NCBI GenBank assembly: GCA_002269645.1
Contig: NIVC01000162.1
Coordinates: 487,545 to 551,544 of the forward strand
DNA length: 64,000 nt
Source: Macrostomum lignano
Taxonomy: Eukaryota
Direction of reading: 5' to 3'
Shown: one piece after another, positions 30,826 through 57,804 of the stretch
Position numbering within the stretch: position 1 is the stretch's first letter
Layout: every line of letters starts with the position of its first letter
The notes under the pieces: generated by a model
Databases searched by the model: none
Told to the model about the DNA's origin: nothing
The model's input: the letters and a program-made list of their open reading frames with translations, nothing else
Translations under genes and position numbers: made by a program

Positions 30826-32001
30826 TTAATGTTGGCGAAAGGCCACTAACGGAGGTGGCGGCAAGACTTCAAAGTAGCCCACTTGGCGAACGGAGCCAAG
30901 ACGACGCATGAGGAAGCGACGCCGTTTTGCGGCGGGACTCGTGCTGCTTCTGCTGCTGTTGCTTCTGCTGCAGTCGCGCTGGCGCTGCTGAGCAATCACA
31001 GGCGCGCGCCGAGAAGCAGTAGAGCGAGTAGGCGTAGGGCAGGTCGTTGCGTTGAATAGTACCGGTGGCGGCGACCTACTAGCGTGCTGCTGACTCTGCT
31101 GAAGGCGTGGACTGCGGCTGCGCGATCGGCTGGCGATGCGGCTGACCGCCCGGCCGACCAGACGCAGGGCCCGCTGACCAAACGAGGCGCTGCGACTTCG
31201 GTTGCTGCAGGCTTCCTGTTGTTGCTGCTGTTGGATCGGCTCAGTCCACGGCTCAACCCACGGCTCCAGTCGCTCGATCCAATTAGTAGGATAGGAGCCA
31301 ATTTCGTGAGCGAAATCTATTAGCAGGGTCGCTATGCCATTGATGCGACCCAACAGCTCCATCGTAGCGTCCATAGGCTGAATGAGGCTGGGGCCGAGAC
31401 AGGCACCCAGATTCGGCGCTGGCATACGATTGATTTGGCTGTGCGAAGAAACACGCTTCAGAAACAGGCAGAGATAGCGCATGGCTGTAAGTTGGCTACT
31501 CGGCAATAGCAGACAGCCGAGGCGAAGAATCTTGACTTGCTTCTCCAGGGTTCGCCTGTTTGTTGCCTGTAGCAAAATCTTGGACAATTCACGAGGTACA
31601 AGGGGCTCTGGAAGCTCTCTCAGCCAGGCTTTTAGCACCGAACAGACATCGTGAATTGGAGTAGCATCTAGTATAGGCAGTCCCTTGTCCAGCCGCAGTC
31701 TCAAATCTCTCTGACGCACCTTCGAGCCTTCAATTCGAAACAATCCTTCGACTTGTAGATGATCGCTGATAAAGGAACAGCAGGCAACGAGGACAGTCGG
31801 GACTTTACCTATTCCCTCAATCTCGGTGGATGCCTGCTGCAGCAGAGGTCGTCCAAAGCATTGTGTACTTCGTTCTGTGTAAGCTGGTAGTCTGGCCTTG
31901 GGTAGCTGGATGCCTAGCTGAAGCAACTCTTTAACAGCAAGAGCGCAGACCTGCCGCTGCTTAGCCTCGCTGAGTTTTTCGCAGTAAGTTGTGCCAGACA
32001 T
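30826..32001 (-). CDS. RhoGAP-domain protein, ARHGAP11-like
   Basis: First ATG is at 32001; the ORF track start at 32088 is TTG. RhoGAP motifs: FGRPL, VPTVLVACC, EGLFRIEG (arginine finger), HDVCSVLKAWLRELPEPL, NRMPAPNLGACLGPSLI. A possible donor at 30882 could extend the gene. Confidence 0.88.
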   Translation of the reverse strand: MSGTTYCEKLSEAKQRQVCALAVKELLQLGIQLPKARLPAYTERSTQCFGRPLLQQASTEIEGIGKVPTVLVACCSFISDHLQVEGLFRIEGSKVRQRDLRLRLDKGLPILDATPIHDVCSVLKAWLRELPEPLVPRELSKILLQATNRRTLEKQVKILRLGCLLLPSSQLTAMRYLCLFLKRVSSHSQINRMPAPNLGACLGPSLIQPMDATMELLGRINGIATLLIDFAHEIGSYPTNWIERLEPWVEPWTEPIQQQQQQEACSNRSRSASFGQRALRLVGRAVSRIASRSRSRSPRLQQSQQHASRSPPPVLFNATTCPTPTRSTASRRAPVIAQQRQRDCSRSNSSRSSTSPAAKRRRFLMRRLGSVRQVGYFEVLPPPPLVAFRQH

Positions 32002-33919
32002 TTCCCATGCTTTGTCTAAACTAGGATTGAGAGATTTTTTAATCCTTCGGGTGACTTTAAGAAGGGGGGTGACTTTGAGCCAATCCAAGGAGGCGAAACC
32101 GGCTCCACCAATCCGGGCCGGGCTCGATTGTCAGACACCCCTTCCCTCCAGCCAGCCCTAGGGATGGGTTATTATTCAATCGTAAACAAGGCCTGGCCCA
32201 CCCAGCAAACAGCAGCTCTCCCCGCCGCCAGACAGCCGCCTAAACTTATATTGGTCTTCACATGGGTTTTAATGCGAGATTAAGGCCAGGACCCGGCTTT
32301 AAGTTCAGACTATTGTTGCGGCTGGACTGAAGAGTACTATGTATTTTGTAAACAGCTTTACAGCCAGATAGCAACGGCTGGCACTGGGTCTTATGCCAAC
32401 TATCTTCACTTTACTTAAATCAAAGCTTGAATTTAAACTGATATTCCTGTCCAGCCCCTGTCTGTGACTCTCACTCTATAGTAGGGAATAAAAAATACCG
32501 GGCTTTGCTGAAACCCGGAATTTTGCCAATACCAGTATTAAATACCGGTTGGGAAGGCAAAGTACGCTCGTACTTGTAAGGATTGTATTGTTTTCTTGCT
32601 TGCTTTGTTTAACTTGTGCTGTACAGAGTTTTACGTTTTACATAAGACAAATGGGCAGCGGTGGTAAACACTAATTTGGGGGATTTTTGTAAAAAATCGA
32701 TACCCCACTTTGCGAGACCGAGACCGAGCCCGCCCAGCGCTATTAAGCCAACCAAACCGGGGGGGGGGGGCATGTCACCCGCACGTGACTTAGGCAGGCC
32801 GGCCACCTCCCCCCGCAAGCACCACGCCTGATTCGCCTTCCACACAAAAAGTCGTGGCTTTTTAAGCTCTAAGCCAGTGGAGTAGCCAGCATTTTCATCT
32901 GAGTGCGAGGGGTCACAACAATTTACACTATTATTTGTCGTAATACTAGTGCGTTTAGTATGAGCAATTTAGTAGAGAACGCATATCGCTGAATGGGGTT
33001 TCGCCACTAGTAGACGCAAATTCGGTCGAGGAAAATCCGCGCTAGAAAAATCTTATTTACCGCGAGGGGCAAGACCGCGGTTTTTTTATTTTTTAATTAC
33101 ATGCATAGTTTGCGTGAGTACCTTCGTACCTACTTATAGTAGAAAAAAAGTAAATAACTTACATAAACTATGCTGCTTACAACAGAATATATTTGATTTG
33201 TACGAGTTAAAAATGGAATCACGGTCAGATTTTACATGTAGTTATTACATGTACAGTTTTAACTTTTCATCTTCAGCAAACAGCAAGGTACATCAAACAG
33301 ATTTTGGCAGGAATAACAGCTAACTTAATATTCCTGCATGACAATGTGTAGTGCTTCACGCGCAGAATGACGCATATAGCACCTGAGAGTGCTGCTTCCG
33401 TTGCAATTGCAACAAGCCTGATGCAATGCAGTGGTGCATTTTGCCGGGAAATAAATGCTTGCATGTATATAGTAAACAAACCTGCCTTGGTGAATGCGCG
33501 TATTAAGCGTTGCGAGAGGAGAAGCAACCAAGAAGACATAACAAAACAGGTCTGACTGATGCGAACAACAGGATACTGCAGTAGCACACCATTGCTACAT
33601 AAATCTGCGCTGATTACGTATACACATACCGTTGCTGCAGTAACTGGTATGCATTATGCTATCTTTCATCTTGATCTGTATACTACTATATAAACATATA
33701 TTCACTTCGGTGTCGTGTGGCTTGGTTTTCAATTGAAGCAGTTTGTTTGACTGTAAACTTCGGTAATTGTGCAATTATAACGAGCGCAGCAGGGCACAAT
33801 TGCCTTTGTAGTAACAGTGGCAAATTTCTGGCATTTTTAAAAAAATGCAGAAAGCACCCAAATATCGCTTTAGGGACCTCTCAGACCAGTCAACATGGCC
33901 CTTAACTAGGCATCGATGC

Positions 33920-37817: not shown

Positions 37818-40800
37818 TCAGTTTTTCCTCATAGGCGGCTTCAGCGCCCAGTTCGGCGCCCCGTCAGGAGGCGGCCGCTGCGACCTGGAGCGCAGCGGAT
37901 CCCGGATGCAGCGGCCCAGCTGCTGCTTCTGCTTGGTGGTGGCGCAGTTGTCCATGTAAACCTGGTCAAGCTGGCGTTTCAATCGTTTCACTTCGTCCGA
38001 TTCCCAGGCGAGCTCGCGGACGCGCAGCTGGTCGGAGCCGCCGGAGCCGCACTCCTCGTCGGAGCTGGTGTAGTCCCGGGTGAGGATGACGCGGAACTTC
38101 TCCAGCTCGTCCGAGCTGAGGCTGGTGGCCACGAGTTCGAAGCTTTTCTGGCGTCGGTTCAGCTTCTGGAAGGTTGACGATGAGGATAAGAGGTTGGCGG
38201 AGAATGTGATTTGGGGACTCTGATGGGAGAATGGGATTTGGGGATGCTGATGGGAGAATGGGATTTGGGATGCAGGTGGGAGCATGGGATTTGGGGTGCT
38301 GTTGGGACAATTTGATTTGAGGATTCAGGTGGGAGAATGGGATTTGGGGATGATTGTGGGAGAATGGGATTTGGGGATTCTAATGCGAGAATGGGATTTG
38401 GGGATGCTTGTGGGAGAGTGGGATTTGAGGATTCTGGTGGGAGAATGGGATTTGGGGATGCTGATAAGAGAATGGGATTTGGGGATGCTGATGCGAGAAT
38501 GGGATTTGGGGATGCTGATGGGAGAATGGGATTTGAGGATTCTAATGCGAGAATGGGATTTGGGGATGCTGATGGGAGAGTGGGATTTGAGGATTCTAAT
38601 GCGAGAATGGGATTTTGGGATGCTTGTGGGAGAGTGGGATTTGAGGATTCTGGTGGGAGAATGGGATTTGGGGGATGCTGATAAGAGAATGGGATTTGGG
38701 GATGCTGATAAGAGAATGGGATTTGGGGATGCTTATGGGAGAGTGGGATTTGAGGATTCTAATGCGAGAATGGGATTTTGGGATGCTTGTGGGAAAGTGG
38801 GATTTGAGGATTCTGGTGGAGAATGGGATTTGGGGATGCTTATGGGAGAGTGGGATTTGAGGATTCTAATGCGAGAATGGGATTTTGGGATGCTTGTGGG
38901 AAAGTGGGATTTGAGGATTCTGGTGGGAGAATGGGATTTGGGGATGCTGATAAGAGAATGGGATTTGGGGATGCTTATGGGAGAGTGGAATTTGAGGATT
39001 CTAATGCGAGAATGGGATTTTGGGATGCTTGTGGGAGAGTGGGATTTGAGGATTCTGGTGGGAGAATGGGATTTGGGGATGCTGATGGGAGAATGGGATT
39101 TGGGGATGCTTGTGGGAGAATGGGATTTGAGGATTCTGGTGGGAGAAAGGGATTTGGGGATGCTGATGGGAGAATGAGTTTCTTCAAGGAATTTAGAATC
39201 TTGATTTGGACCGGAGCATATTTATGGAGGAATGGAATGAGAAATGGTTTCGATACGGCAATTATCGGTACCTTACCATCCGGTTTTGAGTGGTAGTCAC
39301 AAAGCTAATCAAATAATAATGCAAATTCTATACAATATGACACTGCACTAAAGTAGAAGCGCCCCTAAAGAATCCCACGGGCCAAGTCTGCAGACTAGAA
39401 GTAGATTTTTAATCTGAACAGGCAGATAAGCAAGCAGTATTGGACGATTGGCCAAATGGAATAACTCATTACTGTTAGGCGAAGCTTGCTGCGCATCTGC
39501 TTTCTAAAATCCCAGAAAATGTCAGTCAGCCGGCTAGTTTTAGGCAGTCCTGCGCGCAAAGATAACAGTTGCTTATTGTAAATCGGGGCGAATTGAATTT
39601 TTGATTTTAAACTTGCACTGCTGGAGCCAGAGAGGACGATAAGTAGAATAGAATGCTTTTATTCCGACAAAATTTTGCTGGAGGTTAATAGACTAAGCAA
39701 GTGAGCAGTCTGATTACATTATGGCGCAGTTTGATCCGAATCTGCTTCCCAAAGTCCCAGAAAATCTCCGACAGTCGGCCAGCCTTTGGCAGCCCTGCGA
39801 AGTTTAAATAATTCATTATAATAATTTGCATTATTAGCTATGGTCTGCGTTGTTTAATTCGGGCAAGGGTGAAGAGTGAACAAGAGAGTGAACAGAAAGG
39901 TGAATAAAATGAACAAGAGAGTGAACAGAAAGGTGAATAGAATGAACAAGAGAGTGAACAGAAAGAAGAAGAGAGTGAACAAGAGAGTGAACAGAAAGGT
40001 GAATAGAATGAACAAGAGAGTGAACAGAAAGGTGAATAGAGTGAACAAGAGAGTGAACAGAAAGGTGAAGAGAGTGAACAAGAGAGTGAACAGAAAGGTG
40101 AATAGAGTGAACAAGAGAGTGAACAGAAAGGTGAATAGAGTGAACAAGAGAGTGAACAGAAAGGTGAAGAGAGTGAACAAGAGAGTGAACAGAAAGGTGA
40201 AGAGAGTGAATGAGAGAAAGAACAAGAGAGTGAACAGAAAGGTGAAGAGAGTGAATGAGAGAGTGAACAGAAAGGTGAAGAGAGTGAATGAGAGAGTGAA
40301 CAAGAGAGTGAACAGAAAGGTGAATAGAATGAACAAGAGAGTGAACAGAAAGAAGAAGAGAGTGAACAAGAGAGTGAACAGAAAGGTGAAGAGAGTGAAC
40401 GAGAGAGTGAACAGAAAGGTGAATAGAGTGAACAAGAGAGTGAACAGAAAGGTGAATAGAGTGAACAAGAGAGTGAACAGAAAGGTGAAGAGAGTGAATG
40501 AGAGAGTGAACAGAAAGGTGAAGAGAGTGAATGAGAGAGTGAACAGAAAGGTGAAGAGAGTGAATGAGAGAGTGAACAGAAAGGTGAAGAGAGTGAATGA
40601 GAGAGTGAACAGAAAGGTGAAGAGAGTGAATGAGAGAGTGAACAAGAGAGTGAACAGAAAGGTGAATAGAATGAACAAGAGAGTGAACAGAAAGAAGAAG
40701 AGAGTGAACAAGAGAGTGAACAGAAAGGTGAAGGGAGTGAATGAGAGTGAACAGAAAGGTGAAGAGAGTGAATGAGAGTGAACAGAAAGGTGAAGAGAGT

Positions 40801-43800
40801 GAACAGAAAGGTGAAGAGAGTGAACAGAAAGGTGAAGAGAGTGAACAAGAGAGTGAACAGAAAGGTGAAGAGAGTGAACAAGAGAGTGAACAGAAAGGTG
40901 AAGAGAGTGAACAGAAAAGTGAAGAGAGTGAACAAGAGAGTGAAGAGAGTGGTGAAGAGAGTGAACAAGAGAGTGAAGAGAGTGGTGAAGAGAGTGAACA
41001 AGAGAGTGAACAGAAAGGTGAAGAGAGTGAATAAGAGAGTGAACAGAAAAGTGAAGAGAGTGAACAAGAGAGTGAAGAGAGTGAAGATGAAGAAGTCCTC
41101 ATTTTGGCTTTAAGCAGTTACAAAAAATTGCAAATACAAGCACAATGCAGCCCTTCTTGCCAATCCTAGTTGGAAACAGGGATAAAATATACGACTAGAA
41201 TTGGTCCCACGGTTGGCACACAGGAGAAGGAAAAGCATTGAAATCAAAATTACACTTAGGCGAAATTTAGTCCGAATCTGCTTCCCAAAGTCTCTGAAAA
41301 TCTCGCACATTCGACCGGCTTTTGGTAGCCCTGCGAAAAAAACGCATTTAGATGGAAGAGATACAGGCTTTGTTTCAATCGTTTTTTGCGCTTGCATTAT
41401 TGATTCGAGAAGAGCGGTGGATGGTGTAAAAGATAATAAAGATGCGAAAATGTTACGAAATCGATCTATTGATTTAGACTAGGCTATGCTCAAATAAGTT
41501 AGGACAGTTGGATCCTATTCTATGTCTATTCTCAGTGGTAATCAAGGTCTACTCTCTTGATGATGAAGGGTCTATCCTCAGGGGTAATCAAGGTCTACTC
41601 TCTGGGTGATGGTCTATTCTCGGGGGTATTCAAGGTTACTCTCTTGATGATGAAGAGTCTATTCTCAGGTGTAATAAAGGTCTACTCTCTGGGTGATAAA
41701 GGGTCTATGCTCAAGGTGACGGAGGTCTATTCCCAAGGTGATAAAGGGTCTAGGCTCAAGGTGACGGAGGTCTATTCCCAAGGTGATAAAGGGTCTATGC
41801 TCAAGGTGACGGAGGTCTATTCCCAAAGTGATAAAGGGTCTAGGCTCAAGGTGACGGAGGTCTATTCCCAAGGTGATAAAGGGTCTATGCTCAAGGTGAC
41901 GGAGGTCTATTCCCAAAGTGATAAAGGGTCTAGGCTCAAGGTGACGGAGGTCTATTCCCAAGGTGCTGAGGGTCTATTCTCAGGAATAATGAAGGATGGA
42001 TTCTGGATGGTGATAGGGCGATTTTGCATAGACTAGATTCCAGAATTAACTAAAAAATGGCAGATTTGAGCGCAAGGAAATCAGAAAAAGCAGAAAATGC
42101 GATGTAAGTAATATAAATATTAAACTCGTTTCTTTGGCTTCAGCAAGTGTTATTGGTATTTTTGTTCCAAATTTTTTATTGGAATAAAGTTGATAAATGC
42201 CAAAATTTGATACGCAGGCATTAGTAGATTAAAACTATGCTTTTCGAAGAATAATATATCCCTTACTAAGCCGCGATATTTGTCGTGCACTTGTCGCTTA
42301 AAGTCGCTAAAAATGACGGACAGTCTGCCAGACTTGGGCAGGTCTACAATATAGCGCATAGTTTTTATGGGCACAAATGCAAGCAAGCTACTGAAAGTAG
42401 TACAATTTAGCGGCACTATTGCCTGCTGATTTGGAATGGAAACGTCTGAAACAAACAGCTACAGTAGAGCTGGGGCTATCCTATTAACTATAGCGAGAAC
42501 ATAACTCACAAGCTGCTTAAACTTGCATCTGGCCTTCAGGGCAAAATCGGAAAACATGTACAGAATACGACCGCGACAAGGAATCCCTGAAACACAGACG
42601 GAGTCAATAATCTCTGAAAACAGTGCAGAGTATATACTGCTCTTGACCAGCTGTGCTAGAACGACACCATGCTCGTTGGAAACGGCGCTTTTCTTTGGTT
42701 CAAAGAATTATTTCCTGGATTACTAAGCACTAAATAACTTACAGACAGTCTCATTTTCAAACGACTTGCGGAACGAAAATTTTGAAATATATACAGCAGC
42801 CTACACGAGGTGGGGATTCCTTCGGATGGAGGGCGGCGACCGCGATTATTTTTTTATATCGAGATTTATATGTGCAGAGATAAGAAAGTCGCAAGTGCTT
42901 TGTGACCCGGCAGTAGTAGACTATTACTAGCAGTAGGTAGTCTCGGGTTTAACTTAAAAAGACAGACTCACGCTAATCCGATATTTGGCCCGAATTTTGG
43001 TGCCAAAATTGGAGTGCAAATAGTTAATCCGACTGTCCTTAGGGAGGTCTGCAATCGATGCCAGTAAAATCAATAAGCGATACGCTTCGGTAGGAGTAAA
43101 GAGCGAGGGCCAAGGAAGGAAAACATCGCAAGCTGCTGAGGCGCTAAGAAATTTGAAAATGCCTACTTAAACTTAGTAGTAGTATGTATGAAATTGCACG
43201 TATTTATCAATCTTACAAAGCTTCTAAACCGGAAGCGCATTTTCCGGCGCAAATCGATAAATAGGAAGATAGTGCGCGATGCGTAGGGCAGCTCTGAAAT
43301 CAAGTGTTTTATGGTGCTGCTTTGGGGCCGGAATCTGCCGCTAAGGTAGACAGGCCTAATTGCCTACTGAAAACGTCGCTAGAGATCAATTTACGGAGTT
43401 CAGACAGACGAAGCACTGAACAGGTGATTTTCGTTTATAAGTTTATTAACTTCGATCCAAACTACAGATACTAGAATAACTAGATGGACCACTCAGCACA
43501 TTTGCGTGTAAGCTACTTGCAGTTCAGTAGAAAGTTATACAGAAGCATTTTAATGTATTTTTCAAGACAAGGCTTATTTATTTTCTATGAAACACTAAAA
43601 CCTACCCCAAGCTGCCAAGTACATTTCAGTGGGGTGTTGGCCAATGTACAATACGAGTGAACCAATTAGCAAGTTGTTTACGTCTGCAAGCTTTGTTTGT
43701 TTGTTTGGCTTCTAAACTTATCAAAGTCATTTGAGCTTATGTTTTCTTCTTTGCTACTGAACTGGAAGTAGAAAGCTGTTTTACTAAATAAATATTCACA

Positions 43801-46800
43801 AGTGGCCTTATCTAGTTATTTTAGTATTTTGTGCACTAAACAGAGTAATGATCTTGATTAGACCTCAATACAGAGTTCCATTGCATCGAGATTCACCCCT
43901 AGAATCCTAAGCATCCCTTGACAGGAACGGATCCCGAGACTTCTACCCTCACAATCAAGCTAATAGCTTGCTAAAACAAAGAAAAACAAGAGAGCCACAA
44001 CACCAAAAAACCATGACAGCTGCTCATCCTGTCTTACTGTCTCTCTGTACTTGGCCCTAAGCGCGCTGCGTATGTGACAAAACACCCTGTCAGGCCGGGA
44101 TTTGTACGGCAAATCTGTAAGCATTAAATATTTTGTTAAATAATAATTCCTAGCCTCTAATCAGCATTTAGCCGGAACCAAATTAGACGAAATGGATTAG
44201 AAACGTCACAAGAGCACCTATTGATTAAATTGAACAGAAGAGACCAGATTGACTAAATCAAACCAACTTGGGTCTCACATTAAGTTTCAAAGCGTGCCTA
44301 GACTCGAAGCGCATCTTAGAGAATGCTGTTGAGATTCGAAATTCGCTTCGCAGTCCTGAAATTGAACAGGTCTGAACTATGCCGCTCTGCCTTGTTTCAA
44401 ATTCACTTTTTCTCATTGCTCAGCACTTGTTGGAAGGAGAAACCGCCATTTGCCCGGCTAATCCCAACTTACTAGCGCTTTGAAACGCTTTTTAGCGTCG
44501 GTTCTAAACGAAATGAAAATCATTGAGATCCGCGCCTCTTTCGGCAGCCCTGCAAACGCGCGCAATTGTTAAGGCGGGGCATTGAGCTTAAACAAATAGG
44601 GGAGATCTGAACTCGGCTTTCACAGGCCTGGAAACGGCTTTGCTTCATTTCTGTTATCATTTAAACAGAAAATATTTAATACTACTGTAAAAATGCGACA
44701 TCTACTACTTACGCAAAGTTTAAGTCGCGTTCTGGCGTTTAGTTTAAACGACTTGAATATAAAGTTAATTCGGCCATCTTTAGGCAGCCCTGGAAATCGG
44801 CCAATCGGTTGTTGCCTCTTGTATATTAACTAAGAAGAGATATTTGCATCTGGAAACGCTGCATGCAGCTCAGTGGACTCAAGCTCAAGGCGAATAATAG
44901 GGAAGCCAGAACTAGTTAAAGTTTGATTCTTCAGTTAAGCAAGAGTATATATCCCTATCCGTTGCCCCATCAACACTTACACACAGTTTAAGCCGGGCTC
45001 TGGCATTCCGTCTAAAGGACAGAAATATAAAATTTATTCGGCCCTCTTTTGGCAGACCTAAAAAAACAGATTGCATACGAATAAATTGGATTCTCTTGGC
45101 CCAGCAGCTGACATTTTTGTCAGTGTCAATTGACTTGACCGGAGAATCTGGAAACGCTGCAGCTAAAGTTTAAGCATTCGAATCCATAGCAGCCGGAGTC
45201 AGACTGGAGGCGACACGCAATGACACATAACTTGATAAATACTATTAGTCGCAGCACTTACAGAAGTTTTCAATCTAAGCCGCATATCGCGACGGAATTC
45301 AGCGAACATGGCGACAGTACGCCTTAGCAGTTCTACAATTTTTTTTCAATAATTTAAATATAATAACAGTGCACAAATATCCTTTTAATACTACTATCCA
45401 GCGGCCTAGTTAGTAGCAGATGCACATAGTGTACTATAAAATGTCAGATCTATAAAAAACTGCGTATAAACAGCTGACAAGGGCAGAATAGCGGGACGTT
45501 ACCAATTGGTGAAGAAAGACAGCAGTCAGAACCCCATTTTTATTGAAAATAATAGTTAATTAGGTAATTAATTCATACGCGACTTACAATTGATGGCAGC
45601 AATTTTATTGCCATTACTCAACAATTTATTGCTGAATATAATATATAAAAACAAATAATAATATTATTTAAAAGTGAGTGCATTGCTTCGAAAGGTGAAA
45701 GATAGTGCTTTAAAATTACAAATGAAATTATTGCCTCTGAATTATATGTCATATTTAGTAAATTTTAACATAGATAATTTAATTTGCTCAAGCCAAAGAA
45801 CTTGCGACGTTTCCAGACCAAGTAGGCAAGGAGAAAAAGTGACACATTTGGAATTACACAAGCTGCTTATATAATAATTATTAACAGTGCTTGTACTTGC
45901 TATCAGTAGTAGTATGCAGAGAATATTGTTTCAAATGCACAAATTCGCAAGCAAGATATTCAACTAGTTAGTAGGCTTAAGGGAGGCGACCAACAAAGAG
46001 TTAAATTTATTGATTTTTTTGGTGCACCAATATCTCAGCTTTGCATCCCTGTCAACTTAATAAGCACCAATTCTTATTAAATGCATCATATACACAAAAT
46101 TATAATTCCGTTTTGGACACCCATCGTATTTATCCAGCTATAAAAATAATTGATTTTCAATATCAAGCCGCCAATCTCAAGCCTACACTAATATGCTCAA
46201 TACTACGGTAGCTAACAGCTGCATATTAAGTGCCAAAAAATGCCAAACTCACTCTGCCAGACGTCGTCCGGCCAGCCTTTGCCTTCGGCCATCTCTTTAG
46301 CCTTAGCCATGACCATGGCGGCAACTTGTTGGTTGGGCTCCGCGGAGAAGCTAAGCGAGAGGACAAGTGGGAATCGACAGGAGCAGGAATTAGCCAATTT
46401 AATGCAGCCATACATTATTAATAAAGAATGGGGACGGCAACTCACTGAAGGATTTGGGCACGGCAACCCACTGAAGGATTTGGGCACGGCAACCCACTGA
46501 AGGATTTGGGCACGGCAACTCACTGAAGGATTTGGGCACGGCAACCCACTGAAGGATTTGGGCACGGCAACCCACTGAAGGATTTGGGCACGGCAACTCA
46601 CTGAAGGATTTGGGCACGGCAACTCACTGAAGGATTTGGGCACGGCAACTCACTGAAGGATTTGGGCACGGCAACTCACTGAAGGATTTGGGCACGGCAA
46701 CTCACTGAAGGATTTGGGCACGGCAACTCACTGAAGGATTTGGGCACGGCAACTCACTGAAGGATTTGGGGATGGGCACGGCAACCCACTGAAGGATTTG

Positions 46801-49800
46801 GGCACGGCAACCCACTGAAGGATTTGGGGATGGGGACGGCAACCCACTGAAGGATTTGGGCACGGCAACTCACTGAAGGATTTGGGGATGGGGACGGCAA
46901 CTCACTGAAGGATTTGGGGACGGCAACTCACTGAAGGATTTGGGCACGGCAACCCACTGAAGGATTTGGGCACGGCAACTCACTGAAGGATTTGGGCACG
47001 GCAACCCACTGAAGGATTTGGGCACGGCAACCCACTGAAGGATTTGGGCACGGCAACCCACTGAAGGATTTGGGGATGGGGACGGCAACTCACTGAAGGA
47101 TTTGGGGACGGCAACTCACTGAAGGATTTGGGGACGGCAACTCACTGAAGGATTTGGGGATGGGGACGGCAACCCACTGAAGGATTTGGGCACGGCAACT
47201 CACTGAAGGATTTGGGCACGGCAACCCACTGAAGAATTTGGGGATGGGGACGGCAACCCACTGAAGGATTTGGGGGTGGGGACGGCAACCCACTGAAGGA
47301 TTTGGGCACGGCAACCCACTGAAGGATTTGGGCACGGCAACCCACTGAAGAATTTGGGGATGGGGACGGCAACCCACTGAAGGATTTGGGGATGGGGACG
47401 GCAACCCACTGTAGGATTTGGGGGTGGGGACGGCAACCCACTGAAGGATTTGGGGGTGGGGACGGCAACCCACTGAAGGATTTGGGGGTGGGGAGGGCAA
47501 CCCACTGAAGGATTTGGGGGTGAGGACGGCAACCCACTGAAGGATTTGGGGATGGGGACGGCAACCCACTGTAGGATTTGGGGGTGGGCACGGCAACCCA
47601 CTGAAGGATTTGGGCACGGCAACCCACTGAAGGATTTGGGCACGGCAACCCACTGAAGGATTTGGGCACGGCAACTCACTGAAGGATTTGGGGATGGGGA
47701 CGGCAACCCACTGAAGGATTTGGGCACGGCAACCCACTGAAGGATTTGGGGATGGGGACGGCAACTCACTGAAGGATTTGGGGACGGCAACTCACTGAAG
47801 GATTTGGGGACGGCAACTCACTGAAGGATTTGGGGATGGGGACGGCAACTCACTGAAGGATTTGGGGACGGCAACTCACTGAAGGATTTGGGGATGGGGA
47901 CGGCAACTCACTGAAGGATTTGGGGATGGGGACGGCAACTCACTGAAGGATTTGGGCACGGCAACCCACTGAAGGATTTGGGCACGGCAACTCACTGAAG
48001 GATTTGGGCACGGCAACCCACTGAAGGATTTGGGCACGGCAACCCACTGAAGGATTTGGGGATGGGGACGGCAACTCACTGAAGGATTTGGGCACGGCAA
48101 CCCACTGAAGGATTTGGGGACGGCAACTCACTGAAGGATTTGGGCACGGCAACTCACTGAAGGATTTGGGCACGGCAACTCACTGAAGGATTTGGGGACG
48201 GCAACCCACTGAAGGATTTGGGGATGGGGACGGCAACCCACTGTAGGATTTGGGGGTGGGGACGGCAACCCACTGAAGGATTTGGGGGTGGGGACGGCAA
48301 CCCACTGAAGGATTTGGGGGTGGGGAGGGCAACCCACTGAAGGATTTGGGGGTGAGGACGGCAACCCACTGAAGGATTTGGGGATGGGGACGGCAACCCA
48401 CTGTAGGATTTGGGGGTGGGGACGGCAACCCACTGAAGGATTTGGGGATGGGGACGGCAACCCACTGAAGGATTTGGGGATGGGGACGGCAACCCACTGA
48501 AGGATTTGGGGACGGCAACTCACTGAAGGATTTGGGGATGGGGACGGCAACCCACTGAAGGATTTGGGGGTGGGGACGGCAACCCACTGAAGGATTTGGG
48601 CACGGCAACCCACTGAAGGATTTGGGCACGGCAACCCACTGAAGAATTTGGGCACGGCAACCCACTGAAGAATTTGGGGATGGGGACGGCAACCCACTGA
48701 AGGATTTGGGGATGGGGACGGCAACCCACTGTAGGATTTGGGGGTGGGGACGGCAACCCACTGAAGGATTTGGGGATGGGGACGGCAACCCACTGAAGGA
48801 TTTGGGGGTGGGGAGGGCAACCCACTGAAGGATTTGGGGGTGAGGACGGCAACCCACTGAAGGATTTGGGGGTGGGGAGGGCAACCCACTGAAGGATTTG
48901 GGGGTGAGGACGGCAACCCACTGAAGGATTTGGGGGTGGGGACGGCAACCCACTGAAGGATTTGGGGGTGAGGACGGCAACCCACTGAAGGATTTGGGGA
49001 TGGGGACGGCAACCCACTGAAGGATTTGGGGGTGGGGAGGGCAACCCACTGAAGGATTTGGGGGTGAGGACGGCAACCCACTGAAGGATTTGGGGGTGGG
49101 GAGGGCAACCCACTGAAGGATTTGGGGGTGAGGACGGCAACCCACTGAAGGATTTGGGCACGGCAACCCACTGAAGGATTTGGGCACGGCAACCCACTGA
49201 AGAATTTGGGCACGGCAACCCACTGAAGAATTTGGGGATGGGGACGGCAACCCACTGAAGGATTTGGGGATGGGGACGGCAACCCACTGTAGGATTTGGG
49301 GGTGGGGACGGCAACCCACTGAAGGATTTGGGGATGGGGACGGCAACCCACTGAAGGATTTGGGGGTGGGGAGGGCAACCCACTGAAGGATTTGGGGGTG
49401 AGGACGGCAACCCACTGAAGGATTTGGGGGTGGGGAGGGCAACCCACTGAAGGATTTGGGGGTGAGGACGGCAACCCACTGAAGGATTTGGGGGTGGGGA
49501 CGGCAACCCACTGAAGGATTTGGGGGTGAGGACGGCAACCCACTGAAGGATTTGGGGGTGAGGACGGCAACCCACTGAAGGATTTTGGGGATGGGGACGG
49601 CAACCCACTGAAGTATTTGGGGATGGGGAGGGCAACCCACTGAAGGATTTGGGGGTGAGGACGGCAACCCACTGAAGTATTTGGGGATGGGGAGGGCAAC
49701 CCACTGAAGGATTTGGGGATGGGGACGGCAACCCACTGAAGGATTTGGGGGTGAGGACGGCAACCCACTGAAGGATTTGGGGATGGGGAGGGCAACCCAC

Positions 49801-51520
49801 TGAAGGATTTGGGGGTGAGGACGGCAACTCACTGAAGGATTTTGGGGATGGGGACGGCAACCCACTGAAGGACTCCGCATTCAAGCTTTACTTACGGCAT
49901 GCTAAAATCGAATAGGTGAGGTCCGTTTCCTTTAAGCATTTTGTAGGCTCGTCGCATGATAGTCTTGCACTCGGGAGGCACGTCGCCGCCGCTTCCACCG
50001 CCGCCGCCGCCGCCGCCGCTGCCGAAGCCGCTGACGCCGGCTCCGGAATAATCGGCGGACAAGTCGAGTCGAGGAATTTTGGCATAGGGGAATCCGGCGC
50101 TAAGACTGTCGTCGTTCAGCTCCTCCGTGATGATGCAATCGTCTTCCTCCTCTTCGTCGGCTTCGTAATCGTCGCCTTCCACCTGTGATTCGACATTCGT
50201 ACATAACGGCTGCGTTTTAGACACAACATTAATGTGCTCGGGCGATCAAATGACCTTGAGTAATAGCAGAGTCAAATGACCTTGAGTGATAGCAGAGTCA
50301 AATGACCTTGAGTGATAGCAGAGTCAAATGACCTTGAGTGATAGCAGAGTCAAATGACCTTGAGTGATAGCAGAGTCAAATGACCTCGAGTGATAGCAGA
50401 GTCAAATGACCTTGAGTGATAGCAGAGTCAAATGACCTCGAGTGATAGCAGAGTCAAATGACCTCGAGTGATAGCAGAGTCAAATGACCTCGAGTGATAG
50501 CAGAGTCAAATGACCTTGAGTGATAGCAGAGTCAAATGACCTTGAGTGATAGCAGAGTCAAATGACCTCGAGTGATAGCAGAGTCAAATGACCTTGAGTG
50601 ATAGCAGAGTCAAATGACCTCGAGTGATAGCAGAGTCAAATGACCTTGAGTGATAGCAGAGTCAAATGACCTTGAGTGATAGCAGAGTCAAATGACCTTG
50701 AGTGATAGCAGAGTCAAATGACCTTGAGTGATAGCAGAGTCAAATGACCTCGAGTGATAGCAGAGTCAAATGACCTTGAGTGATAGCAGAGTCAAATGAC
50801 CTTGAGTGATAGCAGAGTCAAATGACCTTGAGTGATAGCAGAGTCAAATGACCTTGAGTGATAGCAGAGTCAAATGACCTTGAGTGATAGCAGAGTCAAA
50901 TGACCTTCAGTGATAGCAGAGTCAAATGACCTTGAGTGATAGCAGAGTCAAATGACCTTCAGTGATAGCAGAGTCAAATGACCTTCAGTGATAGCAGAGT
51001 CAAATGACCTTCGGTGATAGCAGATTCAAATGACCTTCAGTGACGGTGGCAACACAGTTATAAAACGACTAACCTTAATGGCGCCAAGCGCCGCGCCCAG
51101 CACGCTACTGGCGCCCATGTCGCCAAGTACAGACGCCTTCTCTTCCTTAGTTGAAGCATTGGCGCCACCAGACAAAGACGAGGCGGCAGTTGATTCGCGA
51201 TGCAGCTGCTGATGCTGCGATGGCGGCGGCTGTTGCTGCTGGTGCTGCTGCTGTCCGGACACGCTGGCGACAAGGCCGGCAGCTTCTAGCTCGGCGAGCC
51301 GGTCGCTTCGATCGAATGCCCGACAATACCTGGGCTCCATGGAGTGAACCACGTGAGTGTGCAGATTGCCGATGATTTTCAGTGCAGAGAACAGTTCGCG
51401 CTCGGCCATGGACTCTACGAGCATTTGCGCGTTAGTGATGGTGGATTCGAACAGGGTGAGAGGCGAGAAACTGTTGCCAGGCGGCAGCAGGCTCGAGTGC
51501 GGGCTGAGTACGTCTGCCAT
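37818..51520 (-). CDS. Gene B: C14orf93/DUF4616-like putative DNA-binding protein (about 418 aa) with a mutually exclusive exon array
   Basis: Constitutive exons 51520-51074, 50182-49896, 46350-46253 and 38165-37818, plus one variant exon from 45332-39473. The frame closes only with a phase 1 to 0 exon. Clear paralogy to gene A (FSPLTLFE.TITNAQML.ESMA.REL, LKGNGPHLF.FSMP, RQKSFEL, RDYTSSDE, LRVR.LAWES, PPP..P.WAL). Family assignment rests on recalled motif similarity (F.S..N..V, KLRSRR, SDEE...W). Confidence 0.85.
38195..39175. repeat. About 27-bp G-rich minisatellite gggagaatgggatttggggatgctgat
   Basis: Directly visible tandem units. Confidence 0.93.
39473..39549 (-). CDS. Gene B variant exon 14 (77 nt): xLPKTSRLTDIFWDFRKQMRSKLRLT
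   Basis: Splice sites gcgcag| and |gtaatg; phase 1 to 0. Confidence 0.85.
39718..39794 (-). CDS. Gene B variant exon 13 (77 nt): xLPKAGRLSEIFWDFGKQIRIKLRHN
   Basis: Splice sites cttcgcag| and |gtaatc; phase 1 to 0. Confidence 0.85.
39868..41088. repeat. Purine-rich compound repeat (gagagtgaacagaaaggtgaa) inside the variant-exon array
   Basis: Directly visible tandem units. Confidence 0.95.
41254..41330 (-). CDS. Gene B variant exon 12 (77 nt): xLPKAGRMCEIFRDFGKQIRTKFRLS
   Basis: Splice sites tttttcgcag| and |gtaatt; phase 1 to 0. Confidence 0.85.
41540..41985. repeat. 45-bp minisatellite (with degenerate flank) inside the variant-exon array
   Basis: ggtgataaagggtctatgctcaaggtgacggaggtctattcccaa. 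Confidence 0.9.
42267..42343 (-). CDS. Gene B variant exon 11 (77 nt): xLPKSGRLSVIFSDFKRQVHDKYRGL
   Basis: Splice sites ttgtag| and |gtaagg; phase 1 to 0. Confidence 0.88.
42510..42586 (-). CDS. Gene B variant exon 10 (77 nt): xIPCRGRILYMFSDFALKARCKFKQL
   Basis: Splice sites gtttcag| and |gtgagt; phase 1 to 0. Confidence 0.87.
42743..42819 (-). CDS. Gene B variant exon 9 (77 nt): xIPTSCRLLYIFQNFRSASRLKMRLS
   Basis: Splice sites ccgaag| and |gtaagt; phase 1 to 0. Confidence 0.83.
42972..43048 (-). CDS. Gene B variant exon 8 (77 nt): xLPKDSRINYLHSNFGTKIRAKYRIS
   Basis: Splice sites attgcag| and |gtgagt; phase 1 to 0. Confidence 0.88.
43217..43293 (-). CDS. Gene B variant exon 7 (77 nt): xLPYASRTIFLFIDLRRKMRFRFRSF
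   Basis: Splice sites atttcag| and |gtaaga; phase 1 to 0. Confidence 0.85.
44038..44114 (-). CDS. Gene B variant exon 6 (77 nt): xLPYKSRPDRVFCHIRSALRAKYRET
   Basis: Splice sites cttacag| and |gtaaga; phase 1 to 0. Confidence 0.85.
44279..44355 (-). CDS. Gene B variant exon 5 (77 nt): xLRSEFRISTAFSKMRFESRHALKLN
   Basis: Splice sites atttcag| and |gtgaga; phase 1 to 0. Confidence 0.8.
44473..44549 (-). CDS. Gene B variant exon 4 (77 nt): xLPKEARISMIFISFRTDAKKRFKAL
   Basis: Splice sites tttgcag| and |gtaagt; phase 1 to 0. Confidence 0.88.
44713..44789 (-). CDS. Gene B variant exon 3 (77 nt): xLPKDGRINFIFKSFKLNARTRLKLC
   Basis: Splice sites tttccag| and |gtaagt; phase 1 to 0. Confidence 0.88.
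44981..45057 (-). CDS. Gene B variant exon 2 (77 nt): xLPKEGRINFIFLSFRRNARARLKLC
   Basis: Splice sites ttttttag| and |gtaagt; phase 1 to 0. Confidence 0.88.
45262..45332 (-). CDS. Gene B variant exon 1 (71 nt): xLLRRTVAMFAEFRRDMRLRLKTS
   Basis: Splice sites ttgtag| and |gtaagt; phase 1 to 0; no stop codon; homologous pattern. Confidence 0.8.
45786..45842 (-). promoter_or_regulatory. Putative RNA docking site for mutually exclusive splicing of gene B
   Basis: Transcript sequence UCACUUUUUCUCCUUGCCUACUUGGUCUGGAAACGUCGCAAGUUCUUUGGCUUGAGC lies between the constitutive exon and variant exon 1. It is reverse-complementary to elements upstream of variant exons 2-12. Confidence 0.75.
46432..49872. 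repeat. 26/32-bp G-rich minisatellite, 3.4 kb
   Basis: ggatttgggcacggcaacccactgaa and ggatttggggatggggacggcaacccactgaa units. Confidence 0.96.
50268..51042. repeat. 26-bp minisatellite gagtgatagcagagtcaaatgacctt
   Basis: Directly visible tandem units. Confidence 0.96.
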
Positions 51521-56100: not shown

Positions 56101-57804
56101 AATGAGGTTAGAGGGTTATTGCTAATGAGATTAGAGGGTTATTGCTAATGAGATTAGAGGGTTATTGCTATTGAGGTTAGAGGGTTATTGCTAATGAGAT
56201 TAGAGGGTTATTGCTAATGAGGTTAGAGGGTTATTGCTAATGAGATTAGAGGGTTATTGCTATTGAGATTAGAGGGTTATTGCTAATGAGATTAGAGGGT
56301 TATTGCTAATGAGATTAGAGGGTTATTGCTAATGAGGTTAGAGGGTTATTGCTAATGAGATTAGAGGGTTATTGCTAATGAGATTAGAGGGTTATTGCTA
56401 TTGAGGTTAGAGGGTTATTGCTAATGAGATTAGAGGGTTATTGCTAATGAGGTTAGAGGGTTATTGCTAATGAGATTAGAGGGTTATTGCTATTGAGGTT
56501 AGAGGGTTATTGCTAATGAGATTAGAGGGTTATTGCTAATGAGGTTAGAGGGTTATTGCTAATGAGATTAGAGGGTTATTGCTAATGAGGTTAGAGGGTT
56601 ATTGCTATTGAGTTTAGAGGGTTATTGCTATTGAGTTTAGAGGGTTATTGCTAATGAGGTTAGAGGGTTATTGCTAATGAGATTAGAGGGTTATTGCTAA
56701 TGAGGTTAGAGGGTTATTGCTAATGAGATTAGAGGGTTATTGCTAATGAGGTTAGAGGGTTATTGCTAATGAGATTAGAGGGTTATTGCTAATGAGGTTA
56801 GAGGGCCATTGTTAATGATCTTAGAGGGCCATTGTTAATGAGCTTAGAGGGCCATTGTTAATGAGCTTAGAGGGCCATTGTTAATGATCTTAGAGGGCCA
56901 TTGTTAATGAGCTTAGAGGGTCATTGTTAATGAGCTTAGAGGGCCATTGTTAATGAGCTTAGAGGGCAGTGCGACACAAATAACTTAAAACGGGCGTTTC
57001 GTAATGAGTTTAAACAATAAGATTAGTGTGCGATTATCGAACTCACGGCATAGAAAAGTTGAACAGATGCGGCCCGTTTCCTTTCAACTCTCTATACGAG
57101 TTGCGCAGCGCCGATCTGCACTCGCTGTTGACGCCGGTCACAGGCAAAGCTGCTGCCCCAGCTACTGACAGCTCCTGGCTGGTGCCAGCCGCTGCAGTTT
57201 CTTGACGAGTTCGCTTCCTACTAGGAGACGCTGCAACAGCGGCCGAGGCGGCGGCAACGCCGGGCGGCGGAGCAAAAGCGGCAGCTGAGCCAGCAAGAGA
57301 ACCGTCCTCCTCCATGATCAGGCAATCGTCAATAGAGTCCTCATCCTCAATCAATAGCTGCTCCTCTTTGACACTGCCGCTGCCAAATAGTGAGATGCTG
57401 CGGCCGCCAGCTGATTGGGCGGCGTCGAACTCAGTTTTTGGCCGAGTCGAGGCGCCATTGGCTGTGGCCTGGCTGACAGTGCCAGCGGCGGCTACTGACG
57501 ATGGCAGCGGAGATGACGCAGCCGAAGATGTTGTGGCGGCGGCGGCGGCGCCAGACAGGAGGCAGGCTCCGTGAGCTTCGCTCCGAGCAAATGCTCGCTC
57601 GCATCTGGGCTCAATAACGCCAACAATGTGCGTGTGAAGGCCGCTGGCAATGCGGAGAGCGTGCAGCAGCTCTCTATCAGCCATGGATTCAATCAGCATC
57701 TGAGCGTTAGTAATTGTGCACTCGAATAGTGTTAATGGAGAAAAATTGTTTGAATTGTTTGGGGCACCAGCGTTGCCGCTCAATTGCGCTACTTCGCAAG
57801 CCAT
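53184..57804 (-). CDS. Gene A: tandem paralog of gene B (C14orf93/DUF4616-like, about 450 aa) with alternative exons
   Basis: Exons 57804-57047, 55835-55738, one of (55240-55155, 54947-54850, 54635-54538), then 53582-53184. Phases are consistent, and intron positions after FSMP and DVWW/DVWQ are shared with gene B. Confidence 0.85.
53935..54465. repeat. 23-bp minisatellite ttatagggcgattcttaatgcac
   Basis: Directly visible tandem units. Confidence 0.92.
54538..54635 (-). CDS. Gene A variant exon 3 (98 nt): xELYLFAQDLSSSALKMREKFAAEKRRQRNRQR
   Basis: Splice sites gttttcag| and |gtaggt; phase 1 to 0. Confidence 0.75.
54850..54947 (-). CDS. Gene A variant exon 2 (98 nt): xLFVDVYCNMQRAVQNRRSSNKLAMSKLRSRRK
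   Basis: Splice sites tttgtag| and |gtccga; phase 1 to 0; KLRSRR motif. Confidence 0.75.
55155..55240 (-). CDS. Gene A variant exon 1 (86 nt): xAAREQYGLVKDDLHKNKMRIRRIRYKQK
   Basis: Splice sites ctttttag| and |gtatat; phase 1 to 0; basic C-terminal end. Confidence 0.7.
55975..56965. repeat. 23-bp minisatellite ttagagggttattgctaatgaga
   Basis: Directly visible tandem units. Confidence 0.95.

What the first reader, a model, noticed from the sequence alone, without database searches (positions are those of the whole stretch)
39473..45332. Hidden array of 14 frame-equivalent, mutually exclusive exons in gene B
Seen in sequence: between a constitutive exon ending in phase 1 (46253) and the last exon starting in phase 0 (38165) lie 14 short exons, 13 of exactly 77 nt and one of 71 nt. 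Each has an AG acceptor and a GT donor (mostly gtaagt, gtgagt or gtaaga), phase 1 to 0, and no stop codon. They share the peptide pattern x-LP-x2-[GSA]-R-x3-[IML]F-x2-F-x4-R-x-[KR]-[FLY]-[KR]. Uninterrupted units recur every ~195-275 bp. Inference: including zero or two exons shifts the frame, so exactly one is needed for the full-length protein, giving at least 14 isoforms. The introns between variants are long enough to splice, so steric exclusion cannot explain exclusivity. Large mutually exclusive arrays are established for insect Dscam1; I know of none described for this family in a flatworm-like genome. The ORF track misses the array almost entirely.
Basis: partly seen in the sequence, partly recalled or inferred. 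Interest (0 to 1): 0.95.

Follow-up and report, generated by a model that had tools for sequence, protein, structure and literature searches.

The report
Flatworm 14-exon array with docking site
An uncharacterised gene of the flatworm Macrostomum lignano carries 14 tandem alternative 77-nt exons, exactly one of which keeps the reading frame, plus conserved complementary intron sequences that look like the RNA "docking site / selector" device insects use in Dscam1.

Summary
On the minus strand, between exon 3 (46350-46253, ends in phase 1) and the last exon (38165-37818, starts in phase 0), there are exactly 14 homologous exon units. Thirteen are 77 nt and one is 71 nt. All have AG/GT splice sites, open frames and phase 1 to 0.

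The window is Macrostomum lignano. The gene (Mlig011614g1 / Mlig003628g1) belongs to an uncharacterised family with no Pfam or PDB match. Skipping all units, or including any two, destroys the frame. Two independent annotations each include a single unit, a different one in each (v10, v8).

A new finding is a likely mechanism. A 17-nt element, CTGGAAACGTCGCAAGT (45817-45801), lies in the intron after exon 3. It is invariant in two diverged paralogous genes that carry their own arrays of 5 and 7 exons of 77 nt. Complementary "selector" sequences (core GACGTTTCC) lie 42-107 nt upstream of most variable exons in all three genes. A paralogue with a single constitutive 77-nt exon has neither element.

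Synonymous-only differences between gene copies, and pN well below pS between units, indicate coding constraint. No read-level RNA evidence was available, so use of all 14 units and strict exclusivity remain inferred. I found no prior description.

The parts
51074..51520 (-). Gene B exon 1 (ATG at 51520; ends in phase 0)
   Evidence: ORF and donor attaag|gttagt. Matches the N-terminus of PAA90078.1 / PAA64749.1.
49896..50182 (-). Gene B exon 2. The acceptor supported by the NCBI models is at 50183/50182; an alternative in-frame AG lies at 50210/50209. The exon ends in phase 2.
   Evidence: Sequence. The NCBI models read ...GAIK|VEGDDY....
46253..46350 (-). Constitutive exon 3 (98 nt, ...GKGWPDDVWQ, ends in phase 1)
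   Evidence: Conserved in the paralogues.
45794..45824 (-). Docking site. The core CTGGAAACGTCGCAAGT is at 45817-45801, 436 nt downstream of the exon-3 donor.
   Evidence: It is the top-ranked window of intron 3 for pairing with the downstream introns. The core is 17/17 invariant in paralogous genes L001 and L002, inside an otherwise unalignable intron.
45554..45572 (-). Second conserved intron element, ATTAATTACCTAATTAACT. Function unknown.
   Evidence: It is invariant or nearly so in the same intron of L001, L002 and L003, and in the homologous intron of gene A (55459-55477). It is absent from the single-exon paralogue L004. Chance expectation is 0.1 per window.
45262..45332 (-). Variable exon v1 (71 nt, K-LLRRTVAMFAEFRRDMRLRLKTS). 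Divergent, with no selector found.
45147..45161 (-). Selector for v2 (TGCAGCGTTTCCAGA)
   Evidence: (dG -26.2, z -3.7).
44981..45057 (-). Variable exon v2
44841..44863 (-). Selector for v3
   Evidence: dG -28.7, z -3.7.
44713..44789 (-). Variable exon v3
44620..44647 (-). Selector for v4 (core CCGTTTCCAGGCC)
   Evidence: dG -24.3, z -3.1.
44473..44549 (-). Variable exon v4
44279..44355 (-). Variable exon v5. Only weak selector candidates: GGCGGTTTCTCC at 44447-44436, or 44395-44368.
   Evidence: (z -1.8).
44192..44216 (-). Selector for v6 (CTTGTGACGTTTCTAATCCA)
   Evidence: (dG -27.0, z -5.0).
44038..44114 (-). Variable exon v6
43354..43382 (-). Selector for v7 (CTAGCGACGTTTTCAG...)
   Evidence: (1 mismatch to the 13-mer).
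43217..43293 (-). Variable exon v7
43110..43142 (-). Selector for v8 (CAGCTTGCGATGTTTTCC)
   Evidence: (dG -26.6, z -4.3).
42972..43048 (-). Variable exon v8. Used in UniRef model A0A1I8JJF2.
42878..42903 (-). Selector for v9 (CAAAGCACTTGCGACTTTC)
   Evidence: (dG -24.6, z -4.2).
42743..42819 (-). Variable exon v9
42677..42698 (-). Selector for v10 (CCAAAGAAAAGCGCCGTTTCCA)
   Evidence: dG -26.5, z -3.8.
42510..42586 (-). Variable exon v10. Used in NCBI model PAA90078.1.
42424..42446 (-). Selector for v11 (GACGTTTCCATTCCAAATCAGCA)
   Evidence: dG -22.7, z -2.6.
42267..42343 (-). Variable exon v11
41254..41330 (-). Variable exon v12. No convincing selector; the only candidate is a 9-nt match, GCCAAAGAA, at 42138-42130, upstream of an inserted minisatellite.
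41156..41177 (-). Candidate selector for v13 (GTTTCCAACTAGGATTGGCAAG). A 1.2-kb minisatellite separates it from the v13 acceptor.
39718..39794 (-). Variable exon v13
39473..39549 (-). Variable exon v14. No selector found.
37818..38165 (-). Last exon. It starts in phase 0 (KLNRRQKSFE...) and encodes the conserved C-terminal module; the stop codon is at 37820-37818.

Best explanation
**What it is.** Gene B is a Macrostomum lignano gene of an uncharacterised protein family. It contains a cluster of 14 tandemly duplicated alternative exons that are spliced so that one is kept.

**What the units encode.** Each unit encodes the first two thirds of a long basic helix. This helix sits just before the invariant KLxRRQK motif and the conserved C-terminal module. 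The isoforms therefore differ in one helical surface.

**First layer of choice: reading frame (shown from the sequence).** The units are 77 or 71 nt, that is 2 mod 3. Zero units, or any two units, give a frameshift and an early stop before the conserved C-terminus.

**Second layer: competing RNA pairing (inferred).** The mechanism proposed is the Dscam1 exon-6 type. [quoted passage not shown] The pairing loops out the units in between and brings the chosen acceptor next to the exon-3 donor. The remaining downstream units are skipped, presumably through repression.

**Origin.** The array arose by duplication of an exon together with its selector, from a one-exon ancestor like paralogue Mlig008807g1. 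It predates the split of three paralogous genes, which still share the same docking sequence.
For: **The array and its frame.**
- The array and its frame logic are verified.

**The docking site.**
- It is the best-pairing window of intron 3.
- It is one of only two long conserved blocks, with a 17-nt invariant core, in a three-way alignment of otherwise unalignable paralogous introns.

**The selectors.**
- Their complementary core is found upstream of W v2-4 and v6-11, L001 v2-5 and L002 v1-7, at a constant 42-107 nt from the acceptor.
- RNAduplex energies are -19 to -30 kcal/mol. For most selectors z is -2.2 to -5.9 against dinucleotide shuffles.
- Summed alignment score is 296, against a shuffle mean of 198 and a maximum of 248.
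- Dock-linker-selector hairpins form 13-16 bp helices, with z down to -6.4.
- Eight of the 18 non-dock matches to GCGACGTTTCCAG with up to 3 mismatches, and all four with up to 2 mismatches, lie on the gene strand inside 2.7 kb of the array.

**Negative control.**
- Single-exon paralogue L004 has no dock and no selector.

**Use of different units.**
- Single inclusion of different units appears in two annotations, v10 and v8. A paralogue model also includes one unit.

**Coding constraint.**
- Between two gene copies there are 3 differences in 1072 nt of variable exon, all synonymous, against 55 in 4426 nt of intron (p = 0.004). The exons have no indels.
- Between units, pN is 0.11-0.17 and pS is 0.46-0.58.
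- Orthologous units are collinear between W and L001/L002.

**Structure.**
- AlphaFold2 places the unit in helix 286-322.
Against: - No read-level transcript evidence (junction reads, long reads) could be consulted. Only two units of this gene appear in any gene model.
- Some NCBI models retain the intron after exon 3. One paralogue model skips the whole array and is frameshifted, so selection is not perfectly efficient.
- Units v1, v12 and v14 have no convincing selector. The v5 selector is weak, and the v13 candidate is 1.4 kb from its acceptor.
- The docking core does not vary, so there is no compensatory covariation. Most L002 selectors share one mismatch that the dock has not followed.
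- Only 17 of 91 double inclusions place the stop at least 50 nt before the last junction, so classical NMD would not clear most of them.
- No other Macrostomum species could be examined.
Confidence: 0.7

Rival explanations
1. The exons are real alternatives, but the recurring intron motif is a protein-binding splicing element or a leftover of the duplicated unit. Choice would then be made by trans-acting factors, by promoter-proximal kinetics or by tissue-specific regulators. The frame would be the only source of exclusivity, and the complementarity to the upstream element would play no role.
For: - There is no covariation, because the docking core is invariant.
- Several units lack a selector.
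- Selectors inside a tandem duplicate are expected to resemble each other by descent.
Against: - Descent explains why the selectors resemble each other. It does not explain a single upstream element that is their reverse complement.
- That element is 17/17 conserved in three paralogues whose surrounding intron is unalignable.
- Only the motif survives in inter-unit introns that are otherwise unalignable.
- Both elements are missing from the single-exon paralogue.
Confidence: 0.15
2. Most units are decaying duplicates (pseudo-exons). One or two, for example v8 and v10, are used more or less constitutively, and the apparent 14-fold diversity is not expressed.
For: - Only v8 and v10 appear in gene models.
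- Units v12-v14 have weaker GTAAT donors and poor selectors.
- Unit v1 is divergent.
Against: - All 14 units keep their frame, both splice sites and an exact length with no indels, while the introns between them have diverged beyond alignment.
- Differences between gene copies are 4-fold rarer in units than in introns, and all are synonymous, including in v5 and v9.
- pN is well below pS for v2/v3, v12/v13 and v13/v14.
- Unit types are retained collinearly in paralogues of 77% and 46% identity.
Confidence: 0.08
3. The cluster works mainly as a regulatory device for unproductive splicing. Skipping, multiple inclusion and intron retention would set the level of the one productive protein, rather than producing protein diversity.
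For: NCBI models of this gene and its paralogues include forms that retain the intron and one form that skips the array and is frameshifted (P0002, P0008, P0022, P0017).
Against: - Amino-acid-level constraint differs from unit to unit.
- Distinct unit types are preserved across paralogues.
- Neither would be needed if only frame disruption mattered.
Confidence: 0.07

Closest known systems
Drosophila / pancrustacean Dscam1 exon 6 cluster (docking site plus selector sequences; Graveley model, as summarised in PMC6071210 and PMC3535345)
   Same: - A large tandem array of homologous alternative exons.
- One conserved docking site in the intron directly downstream of the preceding constitutive exon.
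- A selector upstream of each variant, complementary to overlapping parts of the same dock, so that only one pairing can form at a time.
- Conserved extra intron sequence between the dock and the first variant, loosely reminiscent of the exon-6 locus control region.
   Different: - Different phylum (Platyhelminthes) and an unrelated, uncharacterised protein with no Ig or FN3 domains.
- 14 variants, not 48.
- Three paralogous genes share the identical docking core.
- No experimental evidence here.
Insect 14-3-3zeta, Mhc, MRP and Dscam exon 4/9/17 clusters (PMC6071210; PMC4691838)
   Same: Mutually exclusive exon clusters governed by competing intronic RNA pairings.
   Different: In those genes the docking site lies downstream of the cluster, or the pairing is bidirectional. 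Here the only conserved elements are upstream, and no conserved block exists in the last intron.
Mutually exclusive exons enforced by frame or NMD (the mechanism reviewed in PMC6071210)
   Same: Unit length is not a multiple of three. Double inclusion gives premature stops in 91 of 91 pairs.
   Different: As that review notes, frame alone cannot police clusters of more than three exons. Here four units in series would restore the phase. Most stops lie too close to the last junction for classical NMD.
Ivanov and Pervouchine model: duplication of an exon plus one arm of an intronic stem creates competing selectors (PMC6071210)
   Same: The units include exon plus selector. A single-exon paralogue exists as a plausible ancestral state.
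   Different: The single-exon paralogue shows no dock/selector stem, so the ancestral stem-loop is not demonstrated.

Membership tests
Tandem mutually exclusive exon (MXE) cluster | Tandem homologous exons of equal length, with the same splice phases and each open in frame | tested here: met
   14 units, 13 of 77 nt and one of 71 nt, all phase 1 to 0 and all open.
Tandem mutually exclusive exon (MXE) cluster | One and only one unit present in mature mRNA | tested here: inconclusive
   Gene models with a single unit exist for v10 (PAA90078.1) and v8 (A0A1I8JJF2), and for a paralogue. Skipped and intron-retaining models also exist. No read-level data were available.
Docking-site / selector competing RNA structure (Dscam1 exon-6 type) | A single conserved docking site in the intron next to the flanking constitutive exon | tested here: met
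   45817-45801. The core is 17/17 invariant in three paralogous genes within an unalignable intron.
Docking-site / selector competing RNA structure (Dscam1 exon-6 type) | A selector complementary to the dock upstream of every variant | tested here: inconclusive
   Clear for 9 of 14 units here (v2-4, v6-11), 4 of 5 in L001 and 7 of 7 in L002. Weak or displaced for v5 and v13. Absent for v1, v12 and v14.
Docking-site / selector competing RNA structure (Dscam1 exon-6 type) | Selectors overlap on the same docking nucleotides, so pairings exclude each other | tested here: met
   Every selector pairing includes part of the GGAAACGTCGC core of the dock. Most contain CGTTTC; v8 and v9 pair mainly through TTGCGA.
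Docking-site / selector competing RNA structure (Dscam1 exon-6 type) | Compensatory covariation, or mutational proof of pairing | not testable with these tools
   The docking core is invariant, so there is nothing to covary. This needs minigenes or transgenics, or more species.
Dscam / Ig-superfamily receptor genes | Ig and FN3 domains, transmembrane receptor | tested here: not met
   No Pfam domain at all and no PDB relative. The protein is predicted helical with a long disordered acidic linker.
MXE by steric hindrance (intron too short) | Inter-exon intron below the minimal spliceable length | tested here: not met
   Introns are 117-1459 nt. The family splices introns of about 85-93 nt in paralogue L004.
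MXE by U2/U12 spliceosome incompatibility | Mixed U12-type (AT-AC or GTATCC) and U2-type splice sites | tested here: not met
   All units have AG acceptors and GTAAG/GTGAG/GTAAT donors.
Frame/NMD-enforced exclusivity | Unit length not divisible by 3, and double inclusion gives a premature stop | tested here: met
   77 and 71 are both 2 mod 3. All 91 pairs give a stop; 17 of 91 put it at least 50 nt before the last junction. NMD itself was not testable.

The most novel reading that the evidence does not exclude
Flatworms independently evolved a Dscam1-exon-6-like docking/selector machine. It operates family-wide: three paralogous Macrostomum genes, with arrays of 14, 7 and 5 exons, use the same 17-nt docking sequence. 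It diversifies one helix of a so far uncharacterised, probably intracellular protein. This would be the first large RNA-pairing-controlled mutually exclusive cluster outside arthropods. If choice is stochastic per cell, it would be a non-receptor isoform code.
Probability: 0.5. Interest if true: 0.9.

Novelty: new member of a known kind. Interest (0 to 1): 0.8.

Why it matters
**Where such clusters are known.** In the literature I could search, large mutually exclusive exon clusters controlled by docking/selector RNA pairing are documented almost only in arthropod genes: Dscam1, Mhc, 14-3-3zeta and MRP.

**What this case adds.** It is a clean 14-exon case in a spiralian, with three paralogous arrays that share one docking sequence and a single-exon paralogue as a natural control. 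It would show that this RNA architecture arises repeatedly when an exon is duplicated together with its selector. That gives an independent test of the duplication model.

**Experimental reach.** The species accepts transgenes, so dock/selector swaps can be made.

**The protein family.** The array also flags an unstudied metazoan protein family. One of its helices is under diversifying isoform usage, which gives a handle on its function.

Tried and rejected
- **Family name.** I looked for a named protein family. Pfam gave nothing on gene A, gene B or the remote homologues. A PDB profile search gave only noise. I did not search the AlphaFold2 model against fold libraries because its confidence is low (pTM 0.37).
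- **Extra isoforms in protein databases.** I looked in the protein collections and in 90%-identity clusters. Only v8 and v10 models exist. No Logan-assembly protein appears among the gene-B hits or their clusters. The ab initio UniRef models that chain several units (P0005, P0006, P0037) are not evidence.
- **Other species.** All proteins with the LP-type unit come from M. lignano. Remote homologues in sea stars, an acorn worm and a mussel share only the constant parts.
- **Downstream or bidirectional docking site.** The last introns of the three genes share no block.
- **Further degenerate units.** None was found.
- **Formal pair-count covariation test.** I considered running it on dock-plus-selector chimeras and dropped it. 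The selectors are chosen by complementarity and contain bulges, so the test would be biased.
- **Rfam.** It finds only one tRNA in the window.
- **Gene identifiers.** A literature search for them returned nothing.

Full report
**1. The observation**

- Thirteen units are 77 nt. The first, 45332-45262, is 71 nt.
- All have AG acceptors and GTAAG/GTGAG/GTAAT donors.
- All fit x-LP-x2-[GSA]-R-x3-[IML]F-x2-F-x4-R-x-[KR]-x-[KR]. Unit v1 is divergent.

The frame logic holds.
- Exon 3 (46350-46253) ends in phase 1 and the last exon (38165-37818) starts in phase 0.
- Any single unit gives one uninterrupted reading frame of 427 aa (425 aa with the 71-nt v1) on the 50209 exon-2 acceptor used in that script.
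- Skipping all units shifts the frame.
- Every one of the 91 ordered two-unit combinations gives a stop, either in the second unit or within the first two codons of the last exon.

A profile HMM of the variable peptides finds exactly these 14 places in the whole 64-kb window, on either strand, and no decayed extra copies. The feature is real and far beyond chance.

**2. Organism and gene**

All protein hits are from Macrostomum lignano. The gene runs from 51520 to 37818 on the minus strand. Its parts are exon 1 (51520-51074), exon 2 (50182-49896), exon 3, the array and the last exon. It corresponds to NCBI models PAA90078.1 (Mlig011614g1) and PAA64749.1 (Mlig003628g1, partial).

The family has no name.
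- There is no Pfam family and no PDB relative.
- A profile search of 1.84 billion representatives gives 337 hits.
- These include many M. lignano paralogues, plus uncharacterised proteins of sea stars, an acorn worm and a freshwater mussel. The remote hits share the constant N-terminal, central and C-terminal modules.
- The "family" is therefore an unnamed metazoan one that has expanded in Macrostomum.

AlphaFold2 (mean pLDDT 60) predicts helices separated by a disordered acidic linker. The variable unit forms the N-terminal part of a long helix (residues 286-322), which continues into the invariant KLxRRQK motif.

**3. Evidence that several units are functional coding exons**

(a) Two annotation sets each include one unit, a different one in each: v10 in PAA90078.1 and v8 in UniRef A0A1I8JJF2.

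(b) A second, nearly identical copy of the gene is L003 (NIVC01001722.1). It differs from the window at 3 of 1072 positions in the variable exons (in v5, v9 and v10). All three differences are synonymous and the exons have no indels. Non-satellite intron differs at 55 of 4426 positions and has 75 gap columns (Fisher p = 0.004).

(c) The most similar unit pairs inside the array have pN 0.11-0.17 against pS 0.46-0.58 (v2/v3, v12/v13, v13/v14).

(d) Two diverged paralogous genes carry their own arrays. Every unit in them is 77 nt and phase 1 to 0.
- L001 (Mlig018137g1, 77% identical in the constant parts) has 5 units.
- L002 (Mlig032950g2, 46% identical) has 7 units.

(e) Unit identities are collinear across these genes.
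- L001 v1-v5 pair best with W v2, v5, v6, v7/v8 and v8. Each is closer to a W unit than to any unit of its own array.
- L002 v1, v2 and v3 pair with W v7, v8 and v13.
- The array and several distinct unit types therefore predate these gene duplications and have been kept. Omega for the five W-L001 pairs is roughly 0.15, with dS saturated.

**4.

*The docking site.* The intron after exon 3 contains the sequence GGTCTGGAAACGTCGCAAGT.
- Sliding 24-nt windows of that intron against the 13 downstream introns ranks this site first.
- In a three-way alignment of the homologous introns of W, L001 and L002, almost nothing aligns. The exceptions are two blocks: CTGGAAACGTCGCAAGT (17/17 invariant) and ATTAATTAYCTAATTAAYT.

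*The selectors.* The reverse complement of the first block recurs 42-107 nt upstream of the acceptors of W v2, v3, v4, v6, v7, v8, v9, v10 and v11, of L001 v2-v5, and of all seven L002 units. Its core is GACGTTTCC, extended in different directions in different units.
- RNAduplex energies are -19 to -30 kcal/mol. For most selectors z is -2.2 to -5.9 against dinucleotide shuffles of the same intron.
- The summed alignment score is 296, against a shuffle mean of 198 and a maximum of 248.
- Dock-GAAA-selector hairpins fold into 13-16 bp helices.
- In the whole window, 8 of the 18 non-dock matches to GCGACGTTTCCAG with up to 3 mismatches lie on the gene strand within 42436-45160. So do all matches with up to 2 mismatches.

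*Which exon each selector serves.* L002 has a selector before its first unit and none after its last one. The selectors therefore belong to the downstream exon, as in Dscam1 exon 6.

*Negative control.* A fourth paralogue, L004 (Mlig008807g1), has a single constitutive 77-nt exon flanked by introns of about 85-93 nt. It has no dock, no selector and no TAATTA element.

*Fit to the known model.* This is the architecture described for the Dscam1 exon 6 cluster: an upstream dock, a selector before each variant, and overlapping pairings that exclude each other (summarised in PMC6071210). It also fits the proposal in that paper that duplicating an exon with its adjacent intronic arm creates competing selectors.

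**5. What is weak or missing**

- Units v1, v12 and v14 have no convincing selector. The v5 selector is weak.
- The best v13 candidate (41177-41156) is separated from its acceptor by a 1.2-kb minisatellite, and v12 by another.
- The docking core never varies, so no compensatory change can be scored.
- I dropped a formal pair-count test because the selectors are picked by complementarity.
- No conserved downstream element exists.
- Some NCBI models retain the intron after exon 3 (P0002, P0008, P0022). One paralogue model joins exon 3 directly to the last exon and is frameshifted (P0017). Selection is therefore leaky, or those transcripts are immature.
- Only 17 of 91 double inclusions place the stop at least 50 nt before the last junction. 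Frame would inactivate the protein, but classical NMD would not remove most such mRNAs.
- No RNA-seq reads and no other Macrostomum genome could be consulted. All LP-type units in the databases come from M. lignano.

**6. Comparison and novelty**

In how it works, the locus resembles Dscam1 exon 6. It is not a Dscam family member, because it has no Ig or FN3 domain. It differs from 14-3-3zeta, Mhc and MRP, where the dock lies downstream (PMC6071210). Steric hindrance and U2/U12 incompatibility are excluded.

Full-text searches for Macrostomum or Platyhelminthes together with mutually exclusive exons, docking site or selector sequence, and for the gene identifiers, found no description of this array. 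I class it as a new member of a known kind: an RNA-pairing-controlled mutually exclusive exon cluster in a new phylum and a new gene family.

**7. Verdict**

It is strengthened by the docking/selector evidence, by conservation across paralogues and by coding constraint. My confidence in the full mechanism is about 0.7. Usage of the units in transcripts and a functional test of the dock are the decisive missing pieces.

Noticed in passing
window 53184-57806 (minus strand), gene A: The paralogue immediately upstream is gene A (= PAA90079.1, Mlig001175g1). At the homologous position it has two alternative phase 1 to 0 exons: 86 nt at 55241-55156 and 98 nt at 54627-54530. A possible 66-nt phase 0 to 0 exon lies at 54918-54853. 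The NCBI model of this gene uses the 98-nt exon. Models of its paralogues use either type (P0013 versus P0025). A-type genes therefore seem to have a two-member mutually exclusive pair.
   Followed up: partly
window 45554-45572 and 55459-55477; L001:12506-12524; L002:12016-12034; L003:5973-5991 and 12635-12653: A near-palindromic AT-rich element, ATTAATYAYCTAATTAAYT, is conserved in the intron after the '...VWQ/VWW' exon of both A-type and B-type genes in all paralogous loci. It is absent from the single-exon paralogue L004. Whether it acts as RNA (a protein-binding or architectural element near the dock) or as DNA (a homeodomain-type site) is unknown.
   Followed up: partly
window 38199-39176, 39873-41085, 41524-41982, 46429-49872, 50246-51043; also gene A introns 53893-54468 and 55976-56966: Almost every long intron of genes A and B holds an unrelated minisatellite with a 21-33 nt unit. 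Two of them sit between a candidate selector and its acceptor (v12, v13). Their lengths differ between the window and the second gene copy L003. The last introns of all three array-bearing paralogues each carry a different minisatellite.
   Followed up: partly
L001:1206-18047, L002:1538-15700, L003:3646-19900: The head-to-tail pair "A-type gene then B-type gene" is kept at all paralogous loci examined. The pair was therefore duplicated as a block.
   Followed up: no
L004:6001-8270 (Mlig008807g1): This is a compact paralogue with one constitutive 77-nt exon (IPNQYKINAMFFDFRCKIKRKNLLS) and introns of about 85-93 nt. It is a plausible picture of the state before the array formed.
   Followed up: partly
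L001:11496-11960: The intron before exon 3 of paralogue L001 holds a minisatellite with unit ...GTTTCCTGGAAACCGCTAGTC... This unit contains both a selector-like half (GTTTCC) and a dock-like half (TGGAAAC). Whether it interferes with docking, or is related to it, is unknown.
   Followed up: no
NCBI models P0002, P0008, P0022, P0017: Several NCBI annotation models of B-type genes retain the intron after exon 3. One skips the whole array and is frameshifted. This suggests slow or leaky processing of this intron.
   Followed up: no
window 30826-32088 (minus strand); 62232-62312 (minus strand): A RhoGAP-domain ORF (Pfam E = 1e-33) lies downstream of gene B. A tRNA gene lies near the right end of the window.
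   Followed up: no
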